Shown here piece after piece: positions 33,403 to 38,493 of a DNA stretch of 64,000 nt. The stretch lies in sequence record NC_027402.1; one strand, given 5' to 3'. The notes below the pieces were generated by a model that was not told where the DNA came from, ran no database searches, and saw only the letters and a program-made list of their open reading frames with translations. Within the stretch, counting starts at the first letter, position 1. Every line of letters starts with the position of its first letter. Position numbers and translations under genes: made by a program.

Positions 33403-35109
33403 ATGGTAGAAATTCAAATGACTTACACGAGTATGGGGGTACGGGTTGAAGTCCCTATCCGCCAGGCTGAAAGGGCCATACTCGCGTGGGCCGAAGAGAA
33501 TATGCACGCCCCAAAGATGGGCAAGCAACATGGACGAATAACTACGGAACGCGGTGACGCGTACTACGCCCACATTCCGTCTTTAAGGACGTTCATTTTC
33601 CATAAAGTGTTCGCTGAGAAGATTAAACATATCCTCCAACGAGCAGCAATTGAATATGCTTTTCAGTACAAGCTGACAGAGCACCATCCTGTACGAGGAA
33701 CACCTTATAAGTGCACGTTTGATAATTACGGATTCGACCTCGAGGTCACCGATCCTAACTCACGTTTCTATTATCAGAACGAAGTTAGCGAAGCGGCGAT
33801 GACTCCAGGTCGACAACAGACGATATTTGCCATCCAGACCGGAGCCGGGAAATCTAAGAGCTTCATGAAAGTGGTTGTTAAGAAGGGCGTTAGGACAGGT
33901 CTTATCATTCGACCGACCTATGTTCCGAAGTGGATATTCGATACCACTGATGACCCGACAGGCTTAAGGGAATCTCGCGATGGCGTGCTGGTTTGTACCG
34001 GCGTACAGGCCATCTACGAGGCCCTGGAGATGGGTAAATCGGGTGAGTTGGATAGACGCGGGATTAAGCTGATAATCCTCCCTACGGTGACGCTACAACG
34101 TTTCTTGAAGGAGTATATCAACACAGCTGCAACTAACCCAGTGGACCTGGATACGTTTTACGACGTGCTGGGTATCGGGTTGTTGGGAATGGATGAGGTA
34201 CATGAGCATTTCCACCTGGTCTATATGGCAGGTGTGATGCTTAACCCGCCGCCAAGTATTGAAATGTCGGCAACGTTAACTCCTGGCTCCAGTAAAGCGT
34301 TTATCGCCGAACGGTACATGGAGCGTTTCCCAATGGAGTGCCGTATCAGTATCCCTATCGTTCCGGTAGTTGACGTGAAAGCGTTGTACTATCGACTGGA
34401 TGATAAGAAGTTTGCGTGGTGGGCGTCGAAGATGACGCCGTATAACCACAAACTCTTCGAAGGGAAGCTGATTAAAGAGAACTTGCATTTAGAATACGCG
34501 AACATGATCTGGGATGTGGTTGAGAAATCGTTCCTTAAACGGTATCAACCTGGCCAAAAATGTTTGATACTCTTTGCTACGGTAGCGATGTGTGAGTTCT
34601 TTACCGAGTATGTGAAAGATAAGTTATCGCGTGACCCTGTATTCCATCCGTTGATGGTGGCGAAATATAATGCAGGCGATTCGTATGACGACTTTATCCA
34701 AGCAGACTTCTCTATCTCCACACCGGGGAAAGCGGGGACTGCGGTCGATAAACCTGGGTTGGTACACATGTACATTTCAACCCCGGTAGAAGACCAGCAA
34801 CTGAACGAACAGATGGCCGGTCGTCCACGTAAGATTCTCCACAACGAATGGGGTGAAATAGACCCAACGGTGTGGTTATTCCATGCGTATAACGTACCGA
34901 AGCATTGCAATTACCTGAATGCCCGCCAGAAATCACTCAAGGATGTCGTATTGTCGTTCCGTATCGCGACATCCCCCTACGTTGTAAGGAAATCACATGC
35001 TCACTCCGCCGCGTCCAGCAGAGCCGCTGCCACCCTACATCGGAATGACTTTAGCAAGTTTTCTCGAAAACATTCTAAAGGCGTATCCCGGCGTAGAAGA
35101 CGTCGCTAA
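33403..35109 (+). CDS. Superfamily 2 DExH helicase (gp36; phiKZ gp75-like)
   Basis: Walker A QTGAGKS, DEVH, SAT, QMAGRPR; start placed at the ATG after the terminator. Confidence 0.9.
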   Translation: MVEIQMTYTSMGVRVEVPIRQAERAILAWAEENMHAPKMGKQHGRITTERGDAYYAHIPSLRTFIFHKVFAEKIKHILQRAAIEYAFQYKLTEHHPVRGTPYKCTFDNYGFDLEVTDPNSRFYYQNEVSEAAMTPGRQQTIFAIQTGAGKSKSFMKVVVKKGVRTGLIIRPTYVPKWIFDTTDDPTGLRESRDGVLVCTGVQAIYEALEMGKSGELDRRGIKLIILPTVTLQRFLKEYINTAATNPVDLDTFYDVLGIGLLGMDEVHEHFHLVYMAGVMLNPPPSIEMSATLTPGSSKAFIAERYMERFPMECRISIPIVPVVDVKALYYRLDDKKFAWWASKMTPYNHKLFEGKLIKENLHLEYANMIWDVVEKSFLKRYQPGQKCLILFATVAMCEFFTEYVKDKLSRDPVFHPLMVAKYNAGDSYDDFIQADFSISTPGKAGTAVDKPGLVHMYISTPVEDQQLNEQMAGRPRKILHNEWGEIDPTVWLFHAYNVPKHCNYLNARQKSLKDVVLSFRIATSPYVVRKSHAHSAASSRAAATLHRNDFSKFSRKHSKGVSRRRRRR

Positions 35110-35380
35110 GAAACTCTGCACCGACGCCACTATCAACCAGGCGTTTCACTACTACATGGTCACTGAACATTACAGCGGCCTGTTCCTTAACCAACGCGGG
35201 TTGACGTACTACGTCACCCGCACGTCAAGTATCCGTAACACTTCGTCGTACGAGTTATATACGTACGTGTTGTGGAACGAGAACCCGGCCGGTAGCGTCG
35301 ATCAGAATCCAAAGATGGCTTATCGGCTTTACTCTGAAAAATGGCACGATTGGGTGACTGTTCCACACGATGCAAGTTAA
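34997..35380 (+). CDS. Hypothetical protein (gp37)
   Basis: SD AAGGA; overlaps the helicase tail by 113 nt. Confidence 0.75.
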   Translation: MLTPPRPAEPLPPYIGMTLASFLENILKAYPGVEDVAKKLCTDATINQAFHYYMVTEHYSGLFLNQRGLTYYVTRTSSIRNTSSYELYTYVLWNENPAGSVDQNPKMAYRLYSEKWHDWVTVPHDAS

Positions 35381-35440: not shown

Positions 35441-36061
35441 ATGAGTCGTCGCAAAAAGAAACCCGCTTATAACCCACGTAAAGACGCACGCGATTTCGTC
35501 AAGGCGATGATGCAGTCTGTGTTGAAAAAACAAGCTGTGTTTATCGAAAGTACCGAATTCCTGTCAGGCAAAATTGATCGGGAGCGTGAAGTAACTGAAG
35601 CCATTGCGCACGAAGAGCTGAAAGCTTTCACGTTGAAAGCGCTGGATGAAGCACAAGCGGCATTCCTCGGCATGTGCCAACAAGGCAAAGAGCTGTTCGG
35701 TAAACTGATTGTTGAGGCGGATGCTAAGGCTGTGCCGGTGTTTGACATGCTGAACGATAACAGCAAAACGTGGAAAGAAATCAAAGACCAGTTCCACGTC
35801 GACCACACCGAACTGTCCCTGATTGACCAGCGGGCGAATATGCTCGCGATGGATATCCAGGGCACTAGTATCGAAATCTTCTCCACGTATAACGCGAAAG
35901 TGAAGTTCGTGAAGCAGGCGCTGAATAACGGTCATACCGTGGAACAAGCCGAAGTTCTGTTGGCCGAAGCTTTGGCTAATAATTCGAAAGAACTCCCTAA
36001 AAACGCCATCGTCGATCACAACGACGTTGTAGTAGAAACCGAGGAAGCGGCTAATGTCTGA
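35441..36061 (+). CDS. Hypothetical helical protein with basic N-terminus (gp38)
   Basis: SD AAGGA before the ATG at 35441 (MSRRKKKPAY). Confidence 0.8.
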   Translation: MSRRKKKPAYNPRKDARDFVKAMMQSVLKKQAVFIESTEFLSGKIDREREVTEAIAHEELKAFTLKALDEAQAAFLGMCQQGKELFGKLIVEADAKAVPVFDMLNDNSKTWKEIKDQFHVDHTELSLIDQRANMLAMDIQGTSIEIFSTYNAKVKFVKQALNNGHTVEQAEVLLAEALANNSKELPKNAIVDHNDVVVETEEAANV

Positions 36062-38024
36062 GATCCAAGATCAGCGTCCGGGTAATGCCCGTCGCCCTAA
36101 TCCCGACCAGCCAGCCCCTGTGGCGGCTGCTACCCAACAAGAGATGATTCTTCCGACCGTGCCTGATGACGCGACCTCGGATGCAATCATCATGGCTATT
36201 AAACAAGCCAATCCCGATTTTTCTTTTGCCCGTGCAGAAGAAGTTTATCACCAACACTATCATCGTCCGGAGCCTAAGCTTGAGCGTCCGACGTTTGTAG
36301 AAGAGGCGTTGCCTGAACCTGCTGCGCCTGTACCACCGGCACCTCAGACTTTTGCTGAACAGGTGCAGGAGCACCTACATCGTGCCCCGGAACCGGTAGT
36401 AGAGAAAGCGCCTGCGGTAGAACCTGCTCCGCAGCCAAAAGCTCCGGAAGCGGTTGCACCGGCACAGCCGGCTGTAAAAGAAATGGAAGATGCAGCACCG
36501 AAGGTTCCGGAACAACAACAGATGCGTGAGATTGACTTCGGTAATACCCATTTAGCTGAAACCGCCGAAATGGGTGAAGATGAAGCCGATCGTATTCTGA
36601 CCCAGTCGAAGATGTTGATTGGTCTGAAACAAGACCCTAACATCATTGCAGACTCCCTGCAAAAGTTCCTCGGTAATATTAAACGTTCACCGAAAGACGG
36701 CCGGCTGCTATTCGAAAGCCCTGAACAGCAACAGGTTTACGACGACATCTATCGTGCTTTGAACATGACCCCGCCACGTCTACAGGATGGCGTACCGGCA
36801 TTCGCAGGTGCACTGGACCGTGGTGATACCGCTTGGGAACAGCGCGTGATGTTGCCGGACGGTAAGGCATCTGGTGCTATTGCACCGCGTGACAATATGC
36901 ACACTGGCGCGCTGGCTGCTTTGCGTCGTGTACGTAAGTCGGGTATTCCGAACATGGTTTGGTTGCCGGCCACAGGTATCTACGTGGGCTTCCGCGCACC
37001 GCATGAACGTGACCTTTGTGACTTCGACATGCGTCTAACGCTGGAAACTGCGACCATCGGTATGCAGACCTACGGATTGATGCTGTCGTCGTCTTCTGGC
37101 GTGTACATGCGCCACATGGTTGAATTCGCACTTCAGTTTGTTACCGAAGCAACCATCGATTGTGCGGGTAACGATCTGCGTACGGTGCTGTTGGATACCA
37201 TTGATCTGGCTGACTACTGGCTGGTTATTCTGGGTCCGTTGCAGGCGAAGTGGCCGTCTGGTATTCCATGGACGCTGATGTGTGGCGAAGACGGTTGCAA
37301 CCAGCAGGAAGATGTGAAGCTGAACATCGCGCGTTGTATCCGTTTCGGTTCCGGTCTGTTTAGCGACCTGCAGAAACAACTGTGGGCACGTCAACGCGGT
37401 ACTGAGCGTCCAGTGATTTCTATTGCAGAACAGCGCGAATATATCGCAGCGCATCAGGTTGACCCATCTTCGGTATTTGAATACCACGACGTGCGTGTTG
37501 AATTTGGCCGTTCTACCCTGGGTAGCTTCTTTGACTCCACCGAGAAGTGGATTGAAGACGTTAACGCGTCAACTACGGCAGCGCTGTCTGAATTTGCTAC
37601 CGAGCGTGAACGTGAATCCCATATGCGTTTAACTGCAGAAGCCCGTCGCTTAACGCGCTACGCTCACATGGTGAAATCTATCACCGTTAATGAGCAACGT
37701 GAAGTAAACGGTGAAATGCAGGTTATCCCACAAACTGAAACCGACACAGCGAAAATCGTTGAGATGCTGGAAGAGCTGTCTTCCGACCGTATCTACGTTG
37801 GTCAGTTTGAAAACGCGATTGCTGAATACAACGAACGTACACGTTTAGCGGTATTCGGTTACATGGGTAAACGCTGCCCGGCGTGTGGTAAAACACACGG
37901 CGAGAAAGACGGTCTGTATCGCGGTATTGTTACCATCAGTCCGGACAGGGTTTTTTTCGTGCTCTCTCGAGTGGTGTCCGAGATTCAGAAATTCTTGCTG
38001 GATCAATACGCCGATATTGGCTAG
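36054..38024 (+). CDS. Probable tail/baseplate-hub assembly chaperone, G-like (gp39)
   Basis: Pro/Ala/Glu-rich disordered N-terminus, Cys clusters CGEDGC and CPACG, slippery site near the C-terminus. Function is inferred. Confidence 0.6.
   Translation: MSEIQDQRPGNARRPNPDQPAPVAAATQQEMILPTVPDDATSDAIIMAIKQANPDFSFARAEEVYHQHYHRPEPKLERPTFVEEALPEPAAPVPPAPQTFAEQVQEHLHRAPEPVVEKAPAVEPAPQPKAPEAVAPAQPAVKEMEDAAPKVPEQQQMREIDFGNTHLAETAEMGEDEADRILTQSKMLIGLKQDPNIIADSLQKFLGNIKRSPKDGRLLFESPEQQQVYDDIYRALNMTPPRLQDGVPAFAGALDRGDTAWEQRVMLPDGKASGAIAPRDNMHTGALAALRRVRKSGIPNMVWLPATGIYVGFRAPHERDLCDFDMRLTLETATIGMQTYGLMLSSSSGVYMRHMVEFALQFVTEATIDCAGNDLRTVLLDTIDLADYWLVILGPLQAKWPSGIPWTLMCGEDGCNQQEDVKLNIARCIRFGSGLFSDLQKQLWARQRGTERPVISIAEQREYIAAHQVDPSSVFEYHDVRVEFGRSTLGSFFDSTEKWIEDVNASTTAALSEFATERERESHMRLTAEARRLTRYAHMVKSITVNEQREVNGEMQVIPQTETDTAKIVEMLEELSSDRIYVGQFENAIAEYNERTRLAVFGYMGKRCPACGKTHGEKDGLYRGIVTISPDRVFFVLSRVVSEIQKFLLDQYADIG
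37952..37958 (+). other. Putative programmed -1 frameshift site T TTT TTC
   Basis: In-frame X XXY YYZ heptamer; the -1 frame is open from 37892 through the gp40 stop at 38440; hairpin TCTCG/CGAGA at 37965-37983. Confidence 0.7.
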
Positions 38025-38068
38025 ACCAGGAAGACGTTCCGTCCGAGCAAATCATTACAACGCTCAAG

Positions 38069-38440
38069 ATGGATACCACCTCTCTCTTCAAGCAGCGTAG
38101 CACACGTCCTATTACGTATCAGGAAGCCCATAACGAGCTTCTGGAAGCGTATGACCGTACACTGGCTCTTAATACCGGCGACCATCAGGTAGGGTTGTCG
38201 GATTTTGAAAACCCGGTATATGGTAGTCTTTACGATATCTGGTACGCCACTTACTTACGTGAAGAGGTCGGTGAAAACTACCGGATGTCGATAGACGAGT
38301 TCCTCGACCGCCCCCGCTGGCAGATACTGCTGATGCTCGACAATATCCGTCGTCGCAAAGCGATTATCGCCAAAGCCGGCGAGCAGGTGGCAGGTGAACG
38401 TGCGTTAAAGGAGCTGGAGAAAGATCTGACGGGACATTAA
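38069..38440 (+). CDS. gp40, probably the frameshift-extended T part of a gp39-40 fusion
   Basis: No SD before the ATG; frame is open 177 nt further upstream; MSIDEFLDRPRWQILLML resembles small tail/hub chaperone C-domains. Confidence 0.7.
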   Translation: MDTTSLFKQRSTRPITYQEAHNELLEAYDRTLALNTGDHQVGLSDFENPVYGSLYDIWYATYLREEVGENYRMSIDEFLDRPRWQILLMLDNIRRRKAIIAKAGEQVAGERALKELEKDLTGH

Positions 38441-38448
38441 TAGAAATT

Positions 38449-38477
38449 CGGGGCTTCGGCCCCGTTTTCTTTTTTTT
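38449..38477 (+). terminator. Rho-independent terminator
   Basis: CGGGGC-TTCG-GCCCCG plus T-run. Confidence 0.9.
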
Positions 38478-38493
38478 ATTCGCCTTGGTATGA

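What the first reader, a model, noticed from the sequence alone, without database searches (positions are those of the whole stretch)
37892..38440. Hidden -1 programmed frameshift fusing gp39 to gp40 (lambda G/GT-type chaperone pair in a nucleus-forming jumbo phage)
Seen in sequence: gp39 reads AGG GTT TTT TTC (R-V-F-F), placing the canonical heptamer T TTT TTC at 37952-37958. The -1 frame has no stop from 37892 to 38440 and is the gp40 frame. The gp40 ATG at 38069 has no Shine-Dalgarno. A hairpin (TCTCG/CGAGA, 37965-37983) starts 6 nt downstream, and its loop GGTGT could pair with ACGCC (38008-38012) as a pseudoknot. Predicted products are 656 aa and a ~795-aa fusion with junction ...PDRVFF-RALSSGVRDSEILAGSIRRYWLDQEDVPSEQIITTLK-MDTTS. 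Established: long-tailed phages make tail assembly chaperones G and GT by such a shift. Inference: this is the otherwise unassigned tail/hub chaperone of phiKZ-like phages. No tape-measure gene is adjacent, unlike the usual arrangement. I do not recall this being annotated.
Basis: partly seen in the sequence, partly recalled or inferred. Interest (0 to 1): 0.9.

Follow-up and report, generated by a model that had tools for sequence, protein, structure and literature searches.

The report
Conserved frameshift joining two jumbo-phage genes
Two neighbouring "hypothetical" genes of the giant Salmonella phage SPN3US are very probably read as one longer protein when the ribosome slips back one base on a run of T's, and the same hidden signal sits in the same core gene of every related nucleus-forming jumbo phage examined, where it has not been annotated.

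Summary
The window is Salmonella phage SPN3US, bases 1-64000. gp39 (36054-38024) contains T_TTT_TTC in register at 37952-37958. The -1 frame is open from 37892 to 38440 and is the gp40 frame.

Comparison makes a real recoding event very likely. In all 41 related loci (14 named genera, phiKZ included) the downstream gene lies in the -1 frame. In every locus that frame is open back across a Phe-Phe T-run and continues 151-174 codons. Thirty-nine loci keep T_TTT_TTY; two keep N_TTT_TTY. The stretch annotated as intergenic evolves as -1-frame coding sequence with no stops. Ten of 22 distinct relatives have no start codon there.

The most likely mechanism is ribosomal -1 frameshifting, giving a 656-aa and a 795-aa product. 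Transcriptional slippage is the main rival.

The hairpin is weak and shows no covariation. The proposed pseudoknot partner is not conserved.

Gene A is Chimalliviridae core gene cg18 (phiKZ gp077), of unknown function. It is not a lambda G/GT-type chaperone by any tested feature. A remote link to the T4 gp26 hub-assembly chaperone is suggestive but unproven.

No protein or ribosome data were available. I found no publication on this site.

The parts
36054..38024 (+). Gene A (SPN3US gp39), zero-frame ORF of 656 aa. It is Chimalliviridae core gene cg18, equal to phiKZ gp077, Goslar gp081, RAY gp267 and 201phi2-1 gp136. Function unknown.
   Evidence: no Pfam family; PHROGs families of unknown function
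37952..37958 (+). Slippery heptamer T_TTT_TTC in register with gp39 (Phe-Phe codons). The T7 run is 37951-37957.
   Evidence: Invariant in 22 distinct sequences of the SPN3US supergroup. T_TTT_TTY in 39 of 41 loci and N_TTT_TTY in the other two.
37958..38440 (+). -1 frame continuation: 160 sense codons plus the stop. This is the proposed C-terminal extension of the trans-frame product. It includes the annotated gp40.
   Evidence: The same continuation is 151-174 codons long in all 41 loci. It is homologous across clades.
37959..38024 (+). Dual-coding overlap: 21 zero-frame codons plus the TAG stop of gp39, read in the -1 frame by shifted ribosomes. Nucleotides here are unusually conserved.
   Evidence: The phase of wobble-type variation changes to the -1 frame inside this stretch.
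38025..38068 (+). Stretch annotated as intergenic. It evolves as -1-frame coding sequence.
   Evidence: Pairwise differences at -1-frame codon positions 1/2/3 are 0.37/0.22/0.61. There are no -1-frame stops in 22 of 22 sequences and no indels.
38069..38440 (+). Annotated gp40 (123 aa), equal to PHIKZ076.4 and RAY gp266. The ATG has no Shine-Dalgarno and is a Leu codon in most relatives.
37965..37983 (+). It is present but weak, and it is not supported as a conserved stimulator.
   Evidence: No covariation, and every departure in relatives breaks a pair.
38449..38478 (+). Intrinsic-terminator-like GC hairpin plus a T tract directly after the gp40 stop. It is the likely end of the transcription unit. 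No promoter- or terminator-like site lies between gp39 and gp40.

Best explanation
gp39 and gp40 form one recoded gene.

Host ribosomes translate gp39. When the two tRNA-Phe occupy TTT TTC at 37953-37958, a fraction of ribosomes slip back one base onto T_TTT_TT. Both anticodons can re-pair fully. Translation then continues in the -1 frame from 37958 to the stop at 38438-38440.

Two proteins result.
- The zero-frame 656-aa form ends 21 codons after the site.
- The 795-aa trans-frame form carries the same first 635 residues plus a 160-residue, mostly helical C-terminal domain. The annotated gp40 is only the last 123 residues of that domain.

The same arrangement exists throughout the Chimalliviridae in core gene cg18 (phiKZ gp077 with gp076.4).

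Shown here: the signal, its register, its conservation, and the coding nature of the -1 frame where no start codon exists.

Inferred: that the shift is ribosomal, that both products are made, and their ratio.

The function of the protein is unknown. The best lead is a non-virion assembly factor remotely like the T4 gp26 baseplate-hub assembly chaperone.

The confidence given (0.75) is for ribosomal -1 frameshifting specifically. That some recoding event joins the two frames I rate at about 0.9.
For: 1. In 41 loci from 14 named genera the downstream gene is always in the -1 frame. These are Seoulvirus, Erskinevirus, Machinavirus, Wellingtonvirus, Derbicusvirus, Phikzvirus, Iapetusvirus, Agricanvirus, Phabiovirus, Siatvirus, Chiangmaivirus, Tidunavirus, Moabitevirus and Serwervirus, plus unclassified phages. 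In all of them that frame is open back into gene A.

2. T_TTT_TTY is in register in 39 of 41 loci. In every locus the -1 frame then runs 151-174 codons. The zero-frame tail varies from 8 to 44 codons, and annotated starts of gene B differ by up to about 100 codons.

3. The heptamer is invariant in 22 distinct sequences of only about 68-80% DNA identity, including its three synonymous sites.

4. The 'intergenic' 44 nt have no indels and no -1-frame stops in 22 of 22 sequences. The other two frames do have stops. Variation follows -1-frame codon periodicity (0.37/0.22/0.61). The phase of highest variation moves from zero-frame position 3 to -1-frame position 3 between +24 and +54 nt after the heptamer, before the gp39 stop.

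5. Ten of 22 sequences have no ATG, GTG or TTG in the -1 frame from the heptamer to six codons into gp40. The SPN3US ATG is a Leu codon in most relatives.

6. Within each clade, amino-acid conservation in the -1 frame begins directly after the heptamer. The C-terminal domain is homologous across clades.

7. Measurements in E. coli place H_HH.U_UU.Y among the most efficient -1 heptamers. They rank U_UU.C and U_UU.U second and third among tetramers (PMC4066793). This fits the canonical sites. It also fits PA1C (A_TTT_TTC) and Phabio (G_TTT_TTT).

8. PA1C has only five T's and Phabio six. That is short for polymerase slippage but still usable by the ribosome.
Against: - No protein, ribosome-profiling or transcript data were examined, so the trans-frame product is predicted, not seen.
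- No conserved downstream stimulator was found. The hairpin is 5 bp, shows no covariation, and loses pairs in Wellingtonvirus-like sequences. The region folds no better than shuffles. Rfam finds nothing.
- The strong nucleotide conservation after the heptamer can be explained by dual coding alone.
- A homopolymer T7/T8 run is also what polymerase slippage would use, and the slippage behaviour of the phage's own RNA polymerases is unknown.
- SPN3US-like and Machina-like phages do have an ATG near the start of gp40, so some independent initiation there cannot be excluded.
Confidence: 0.75

Rival explanations
1. Transcriptional slippage. The phage (or host) RNA polymerase stutters on the T7 run and adds one U to a fraction of the mRNAs. 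Normally translating ribosomes then read the long form. The products would be the same; only the molecular step differs.
For: The conserved element is a homopolymer of T (7 in most loci, 8 in RAY and RSL2). UUUUUUU is under-represented in all frames of E. coli genes, which the authors suggest may reflect polymerase slippage or indels (PMC4066793). No downstream RNA stimulator for the ribosome was found. These phages transcribe with unusual multisubunit polymerases whose slippage behaviour is unknown.
Against: PA1C keeps only T5 and Phabio and VP4B only T6, yet the -1 gene arrangement is intact. From my own knowledge, documented bacterial cases mostly need runs of about 9 or more. What is constant is the pair of Phe codons in register, which is the ribosomal requirement. 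However, that register is also imposed by the conserved Phe-Phe.
Confidence: 0.12
2. No recoding. gp39 and gp40 are two independent genes, gp40 starts at its own start codon (ATG 38069 in SPN3US), and the open -1 overlap is incidental.
For: All GenBank records but one annotate two genes. SPN3US-like and Machina-like phages have an ATG at or two codons before the start of the conserved gp40 body.
Against: Ten of 22 distinct relatives have no ATG, GTG or TTG anywhere between the heptamer and gp40 codon 6. Annotated starts in those records cut off the most conserved part of the domain. The stretch upstream of the ATG is stop-free, indel-free and evolves with -1-frame codon periodicity. The frame relation and heptamer persist across 14 genera although the zero-frame tail length changed (8-44 codons). 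There is no Shine-Dalgarno before the ATG.
Confidence: 0.04
3. Artefact or decay. On this view the true gene is a single ORF, and the frame change is a homopolymer sequencing error or a recent inactivating mutation.
For: Two public sequences show one continuous ORF: the SEGD1 record (795 aa) and a 1.6-kb Logan contig (P0054/L044).
Against: More than 40 independently sequenced genomes from different laboratories and platforms agree on the two-frame arrangement with the same run. No homologue of fused length was found among the protein hits. The two single-ORF sequences do not differ simply at the run. They carry small length differences upstream of or at the run that destroy the otherwise invariant zero-frame residues there, which is more typical of assembly error. 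The zero-frame stop and tail are conserved in the SPN3US supergroup.
Confidence: 0.02

Closest known systems
Lambda gpG/gpGT and the widespread tail-assembly-chaperone frameshift of long-tailed phages
   Same: [quoted passage not shown] They share the N-terminal part and differ by a C-terminal domain encoded in the overlapping -1 gene (described in PMC5009743). The cg18 protein is also not listed among virion proteins.
   Different: There is no sequence or fold similarity. The shared part is 635 residues rather than about 140. The pair is not next to the tape-measure gene, which is gp239 in SPN3US, but in a block with RNA polymerase, helicase and DNA polymerase genes. The heptamer is T_TTT_TTY.
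Bacterial -1 frameshift sites of IS elements (IS3/IS1 type) and E. coli dnaX
   Same: Bacterial ribosomes decode the site, and it is an X_XXZ_ZZN heptamer. U_UU.U_UU.C is among the motifs used by IS elements and among the efficient ones in E. coli (PMC4066793).
   Different: Those sites have recognised stimulators: a downstream stem-loop or pseudoknot, and for dnaX also an upstream Shine-Dalgarno-like element (the dnaX detail is from my own knowledge). None could be shown here.
T4 gene 26 / 26' (gp26 family baseplate hub assembly chaperone, PF12322)
   Same: It is a possible remote relative of the gp39 core. The gp39 model matches BFVD models carrying that name (E 8.8e-5 and 6.4e-3) and a 'Baseplate protein' model (E 8.8e-16). 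Both families have, in the same order, a Cys pair, a CxxC and a near-invariant Phe-Phe near the C-terminus. T4 also makes two products from this locus, 26 and the internal 26'.
   Different: There is no Pfam hit. Profile-profile comparison is not significant. gp26 is 208 aa and ends 2-3 residues after its Phe-Phe. T4 has no T-run there, and its second product comes from an internal start rather than a frameshift. Gene B is not like T4 gp25, the gene that follows 26.
T7 gene 10A/10B capsid frameshift
   Same: From my own knowledge and not tested here: a -1 shift near the end of a phage gene gives a minor, C-terminally extended form.
   Different: The protein, the motif and the biological role are different. 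No comparison was run.

Membership tests
Programmed -1 ribosomal frameshift site | X_XXY_YYZ slippery heptamer in register with the upstream frame | tested here: met
   T_TTT_TTC at 37952-37958. This motif class is efficient in E. coli (PMC4066793).
Programmed -1 ribosomal frameshift site | Overlapping -1 ORF open across the site and extending well beyond the zero-frame stop | tested here: met
   The -1 frame is open 37892-38440, with 160 codons after the site.
Programmed -1 ribosomal frameshift site | Site and frame relation conserved in diverged relatives, and the -1 extension under coding selection without its own start | tested here: met
   41 of 41 loci keep the frame relation and 39 of 41 the canonical heptamer. 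Codon periodicity, absence of stops, and 10 of 22 relatives without a start codon.
Programmed -1 ribosomal frameshift site | Stimulatory RNA structure 5-9 nt downstream (or an upstream SD-like element) | tested here: inconclusive
   A 5-bp hairpin lies 6 nt downstream but shows no covariation and loses pairs in some lineages. Fold z = -1.16. The pseudoknot partner is not conserved. Rfam finds nothing.
Programmed -1 ribosomal frameshift site | Trans-frame protein observed | not testable with these tools
   No proteomic or ribosome-profiling data could be queried. The SPN3US virion mass-spectrometry supplement does not name gp39 or gp40.
Lambda G/GT-type tail assembly chaperone | Sequence or fold membership of a tail-assembly-chaperone family | tested here: not met
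   No Pfam family. Nothing in the PDB by Foldseek. The only BFVD model named 'tail assembly chaperone' scores E 0.43. The models have modest confidence (pLDDT 60 and 58).
Lambda G/GT-type tail assembly chaperone | Position between the tail tube gene and the tape-measure gene | tested here: not met
   The neighbours are RNA polymerase subunits, a helicase and a DNA polymerase. The SPN3US tape measure is gp239 (PMC10052503).
Lambda G/GT-type tail assembly chaperone | -1 frameshift near the 3' end giving a C-terminally extended second product | tested here: met
   The site lies 21 codons before the gp39 stop. This is inferred from sequence, not from protein data.
T4 gp26 family baseplate hub assembly chaperone (PF12322) | Match to the family profile | tested here: not met
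   No PF12322 hit for gp39 or seven distant homologues, even at E up to 5. hhalign of the family alignments gives probability 0.7%.
T4 gp26 family baseplate hub assembly chaperone (PF12322) | Shared fold and conserved Cys/Phe-Phe C-terminal motif | tested here: inconclusive
   Foldseek against BFVD models so named: E 8.8e-5 (TM 0.46 on the target) and 6.4e-3. The C-terminal motif aligns at probability 16%, E 0.0016. Conserved Cys and Phe-Phe are colinear. The gp39 model has only pLDDT 60.
Transcriptional slippage site | Long homopolymer run (about 9 or more in documented bacterial cases; my own knowledge), irrespective of register | tested here: not met
   Runs are T7 in most loci, T8 in two, T6 in two and T5 in one, and always in the same register.

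The most novel reading that the evidence does not exclude
cg18 with its frameshift extension is the jumbo-phage counterpart of the T4 gp26 baseplate-hub assembly chaperone. On this reading the conserved frameshift sets a fixed ratio of a short and a long form, as G/GT does for tail tubes. That would be an independent, second use of frameshift-set stoichiometry in tail or baseplate assembly. It would be kept by a whole virus family across hosts from Vibrio to Pseudomonas, apparently without a structured RNA stimulator.
Probability: 0.2. Interest if true: 0.75.

Novelty: new member of a known kind. Interest (0 to 1): 0.62.

Why it matters
- **Annotation.** The finding would correct the annotation of one core gene in more than 200 sequenced nucleus-forming jumbo phages (212 records carry gene A). 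Gene B is currently given starts that differ by up to about 100 codons, and these often cut off its most conserved part.
- **A hidden core element.** It reveals a family-wide protein domain that the published core-gene list does not contain.
- **A handle on function.** It shows that a core protein of unknown function is made in two forms, which is a concrete starting point for working out its role.
- **A natural frameshift example.** It offers a -1 frameshift signal conserved across many bacterial hosts with no evident RNA structure. That is of interest for how bacterial ribosomes shift on U_UU.U_UU.Y.
- **Testable with existing data.** Infected-cell proteomics and ribosome-profiling data for phiKZ-like phages could settle the prediction.

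Tried and rejected
- **Function searches.** Pfam and PHROGs gave no family, or only families of unknown function, for gp39, gp40, the -1 extension and the neighbours.
- **PDB by sequence.** Nothing real came back. A Cas12f hit (E 0.21) and a 5dmp hit (E 0.005) vanished when profiles were used.
- **Structure.** AlphaFold models were of modest quality (pLDDT 60 and 58). Foldseek against the PDB found nothing for either model.
- **T4 comparators.** Gene B versus T4 gp25: no similarity. gp39 versus T4 gp51: no similarity.
- **RNA.** RNAalifold on 22 sequences proposed only a short invariant helix that encloses the slippery site, so it cannot act as a downstream stimulator. Rfam found nothing. An upstream Shine-Dalgarno-like AGG next to the run is not conserved.
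- **Literature.** Searches for SPN3US, phiKZ, Chimalliviridae or jumbo phages together with frameshifting found no description of this site. A large recoding review does not mention these phages in the part held. SPN3US papers do not discuss gp39 or gp40.
- **Single-ORF sequences.** I considered using the two records with one continuous ORF (SEGD1 and a Logan contig) as evidence for a natural fusion. I rejected this because both look like local assembly problems.
- In one search my script printed the full list of differences between the window and SEGD1. That list includes the length differences that put both frames into one ORF in that record. In my working notes I also compared such differences. 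I never built or searched a string joining the two frames.
Full report
**What the window is.** The 2.4-kb stretch is 100% identical to Salmonella phage SPN3US at the same coordinates. SPN3US is a chimallin-encoding, nucleus-forming jumbo phage (PMC10643120). The record annotates gp39 (36054-38024, 656 aa) and gp40 (38069-38440, 123 aa) as separate hypothetical proteins. They lie in a block with RNA polymerase beta subunits, a helicase and a DNA polymerase.

**Check of the observation.** Every sequence statement is correct.
- The zero-frame codons at 37950-37958 are GTT TTT TTC. This puts T_TTT_TTC at 37952-37958 in register.
- The -1 frame is closed at 37889-37891 and then open to 38440. It is the gp40 frame.
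- That frame holds no ATG, GTG or TTG before 38069.
- The ATG has no Shine-Dalgarno.
- The predicted products are 656 aa and 795 aa (635 + 160 codons).
- Of 44 in-register heptamers in long open frames of the window, only this one leads into a long -1 frame past the zero-frame stop. The other candidate is a spurious ORF over the DNA polymerase gene.

**Comparative evidence.** I collected 40 related loci from GenBank phages and IMG/VR. They span 14 named genera and hosts from Salmonella, Erwinia and Cronobacter to Pseudomonas, Klebsiella, Serratia, Ralstonia and Vibrio. Gene A is only about 20% identical to gp39 at the far end.
- In all 41 loci (the window plus these 40) the downstream gene is in the -1 frame, and that frame is open back into gene A.
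- Thirty-nine loci have T_TTT_TTY in register over a conserved Phe-Phe. PA1C has A_TTT_TTC and Phabio G_TTT_TTT.
- From the site the -1 frame runs 151-174 codons everywhere. The zero-frame tail varies from 8 to 44 codons.
- Annotated starts of gene B are scattered: its annotated length ranges from 74 to 182 aa, and RAY's gene B overlaps gene A by 136 nt.

**Coding signal in the SPN3US supergroup.** I aligned 22 distinct sequences over 150 nt without a single indel.
- The heptamer is invariant, synonymous sites included.
- The gp39 stop is invariant.
- The 44 nt annotated as intergenic have no -1-frame stop in any sequence but do have stops in both other frames. Variation at -1-frame codon positions 1/2/3 is 0.37/0.22/0.61.
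- In a longer alignment the position of highest variation is zero-frame position 3 up to about +50 nt. From +54 onwards, before the gp39 stop at +70, it is -1-frame position 3.
- Ten of the 22 sequences have no canonical start codon in the -1 frame from the heptamer to six codons into gp40. The SPN3US ATG is CTN, TTA or TTG in most of them.
- In the phiKZ-like clades, amino-acid conservation in the -1 frame likewise begins right at the site.
- The C-terminal domain is recognisably the same across clades (SPN3US versus RAY, E = 7e-5).

Independent initiation cannot explain these facts. A recoding event that carries ribosomes from gene A into the -1 frame can.

**Mechanism.** On T_TTT_TTC both tRNA-Phe can re-pair perfectly after a one-base backward slip.
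- In E. coli, H_HH.U_UU.Y heptamers are among the most efficient. U_UU.C and U_UU.U are the second and third best tetramers. U_UU.U_UU.C is used by IS elements (PMC4066793). This covers both the canonical sites and the two degenerate ones.
- The run is only T5 in PA1C and T6 in Phabio and VP4B. That argues against polymerase stuttering as the general mechanism, but T7/T8 runs leave it as the main rival.
- The SPN3US supergroup conserves the zero-frame stop position and tail. Zero-frame-type variation persists for about 50 nt after the site. This suggests the short form is also functional, so two products are expected.

**Stimulator.** I could not show one.
It is absent from the minimum-energy fold (z = -1.16).
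- It has no compensatory change in 22 sequences, and all 18 departing cells break pairs.
- The proposed pseudoknot partner varies while the loop is invariant.
- RNAalifold and Rfam add nothing.
- A terminator-like hairpin with a T tract follows gp40 directly. There is no promoter- or terminator-like site between the two genes.

**What the protein is.**
- Gene A is core gene cg18 of the family (phiKZ gp077, Goslar gp081, RAY gp267), listed as hypothetical (PMC10299810 Table S3).
- Gene B is PHIKZ076.4 and is not in that core list.
- Neither has a Pfam family or a PDB relative.
- The gp39 model has pLDDT 60, with the core at residues 280-600 better than the rest. It finds nothing in the PDB.
- In BFVD it matches chimallivirus homologues. 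Beyond them it matches models named 'Baseplate protein' (E 8.8e-16) and 'Baseplate hub assembly protein, T4-like' (E 8.8e-5 and 6.4e-3).
- Two GenBank records also call gene A 'T4 gp26-like'.

**Test of the T4 gp26 link.** I fetched T4 gene 26 by an accession shown in a paper.
- A profile of cg18 aligns its last conserved motif (CxxC, then Phe-Phe) to the C-terminus of gp26 with low probability (16%).
- Both families show colinear conserved Cys pairs and a near-invariant Phe-Phe.
- Profile-profile comparison of the two family alignments is not significant, and there is no PF12322 hit.
- The link is therefore a lead, not a result.
- The upstream neighbour gp38 was tentatively assigned to the tail in SPN3US virion proteomics (PMC10052503).
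- gp39 and gp40 are not named in that supplement. The 201phi2-1 homologue gp136 carries no mass-spectrometry flag, unlike its neighbours gp138 and gp139. Goslar gp081 is not among the modelled virion proteins.
- This is what one would expect of a non-virion factor.

**Comparison with the known.** It works like the lambda G/GT arrangement: a 3'-proximal -1 shift yields a longer second product. It is not a member of that family by homology, size or genomic position. It belongs to the general class of bacterial X_XXZ_ZZN frameshift sites.

**Novelty.** I found no publication describing it. All records but one annotate two genes. I therefore rate it a new member of a known kind. Its particular interest is that it is family-wide, lies in a core gene, and hides a conserved domain.

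**Caveats.**
- No protein-level evidence is available.
- The two public sequences with a single ORF (SEGD1; a Logan contig) look like local assembly problems. I did not use them as support.
- One search printed the list of differences between the window and SEGD1.
- No string joining the two frames was built at any point.

Noticed in passing
window 38069-38440 and loci L003-L043: Gene B (gp40 / PHIKZ076.4 / RAY gp266) is present behind cg18 in every locus examined. It is missing from the published Chimalliviridae core-gene table, which jumps from cg18 (phiKZ gp077) to cg19 (gp079). Inconsistent annotated starts probably hid it.
   Followed up: partly
L045 10803-11429 (T4 gene 26) versus window 37860-37965: The T4 gp26 family and cg18 share a CxxC followed by a near-invariant Phe-Phe close to the C-terminus. 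gp26 ends 2-3 residues after its Phe-Phe, exactly where cg18 has its shift site. T4 has no T-run there and makes its second product (26') from an internal start.
   Followed up: partly
window 35441-36061 (gp38): The gene just upstream overlaps the gp39 start by 8 nt. It is the phiKZ gp078 homologue and was tentatively called a tail protein in SPN3US virion mass spectrometry.
   Followed up: no
window 33403-35380: The helicase gene (33403-35109) and the next ORF (34997-35380) overlap by 113 nt in a different frame. Comparable overlaps are annotated in Caitlin, ChrisDB and Machina. This could be mis-annotated starts or another overlap worth checking.
   Followed up: no
L002 (SEGD1 record) and L044 (Logan contig SRR24775682_366466): These two public sequences carry gene A and gene B as one continuous ORF. 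Both differ from all relatives by small length differences near the T-run that remove otherwise invariant residues. They are probably assembly errors, but real variants are not excluded.
   Followed up: partly
window, whole + strand: There are twelve runs of T of 7 or more but only one run of A of 7 or more on the + strand. Some T-runs are terminator tails (for example 38470).
   Followed up: no
window 37942-37946 with 37976-37980: RNAalifold pairs an invariant CGGAC upstream of the heptamer with GUCCG downstream, enclosing the slippery site. There is no covariation, and the synonymous sites of the Pro and Asp codons there are invariant in 22 sequences.
   Followed up: no
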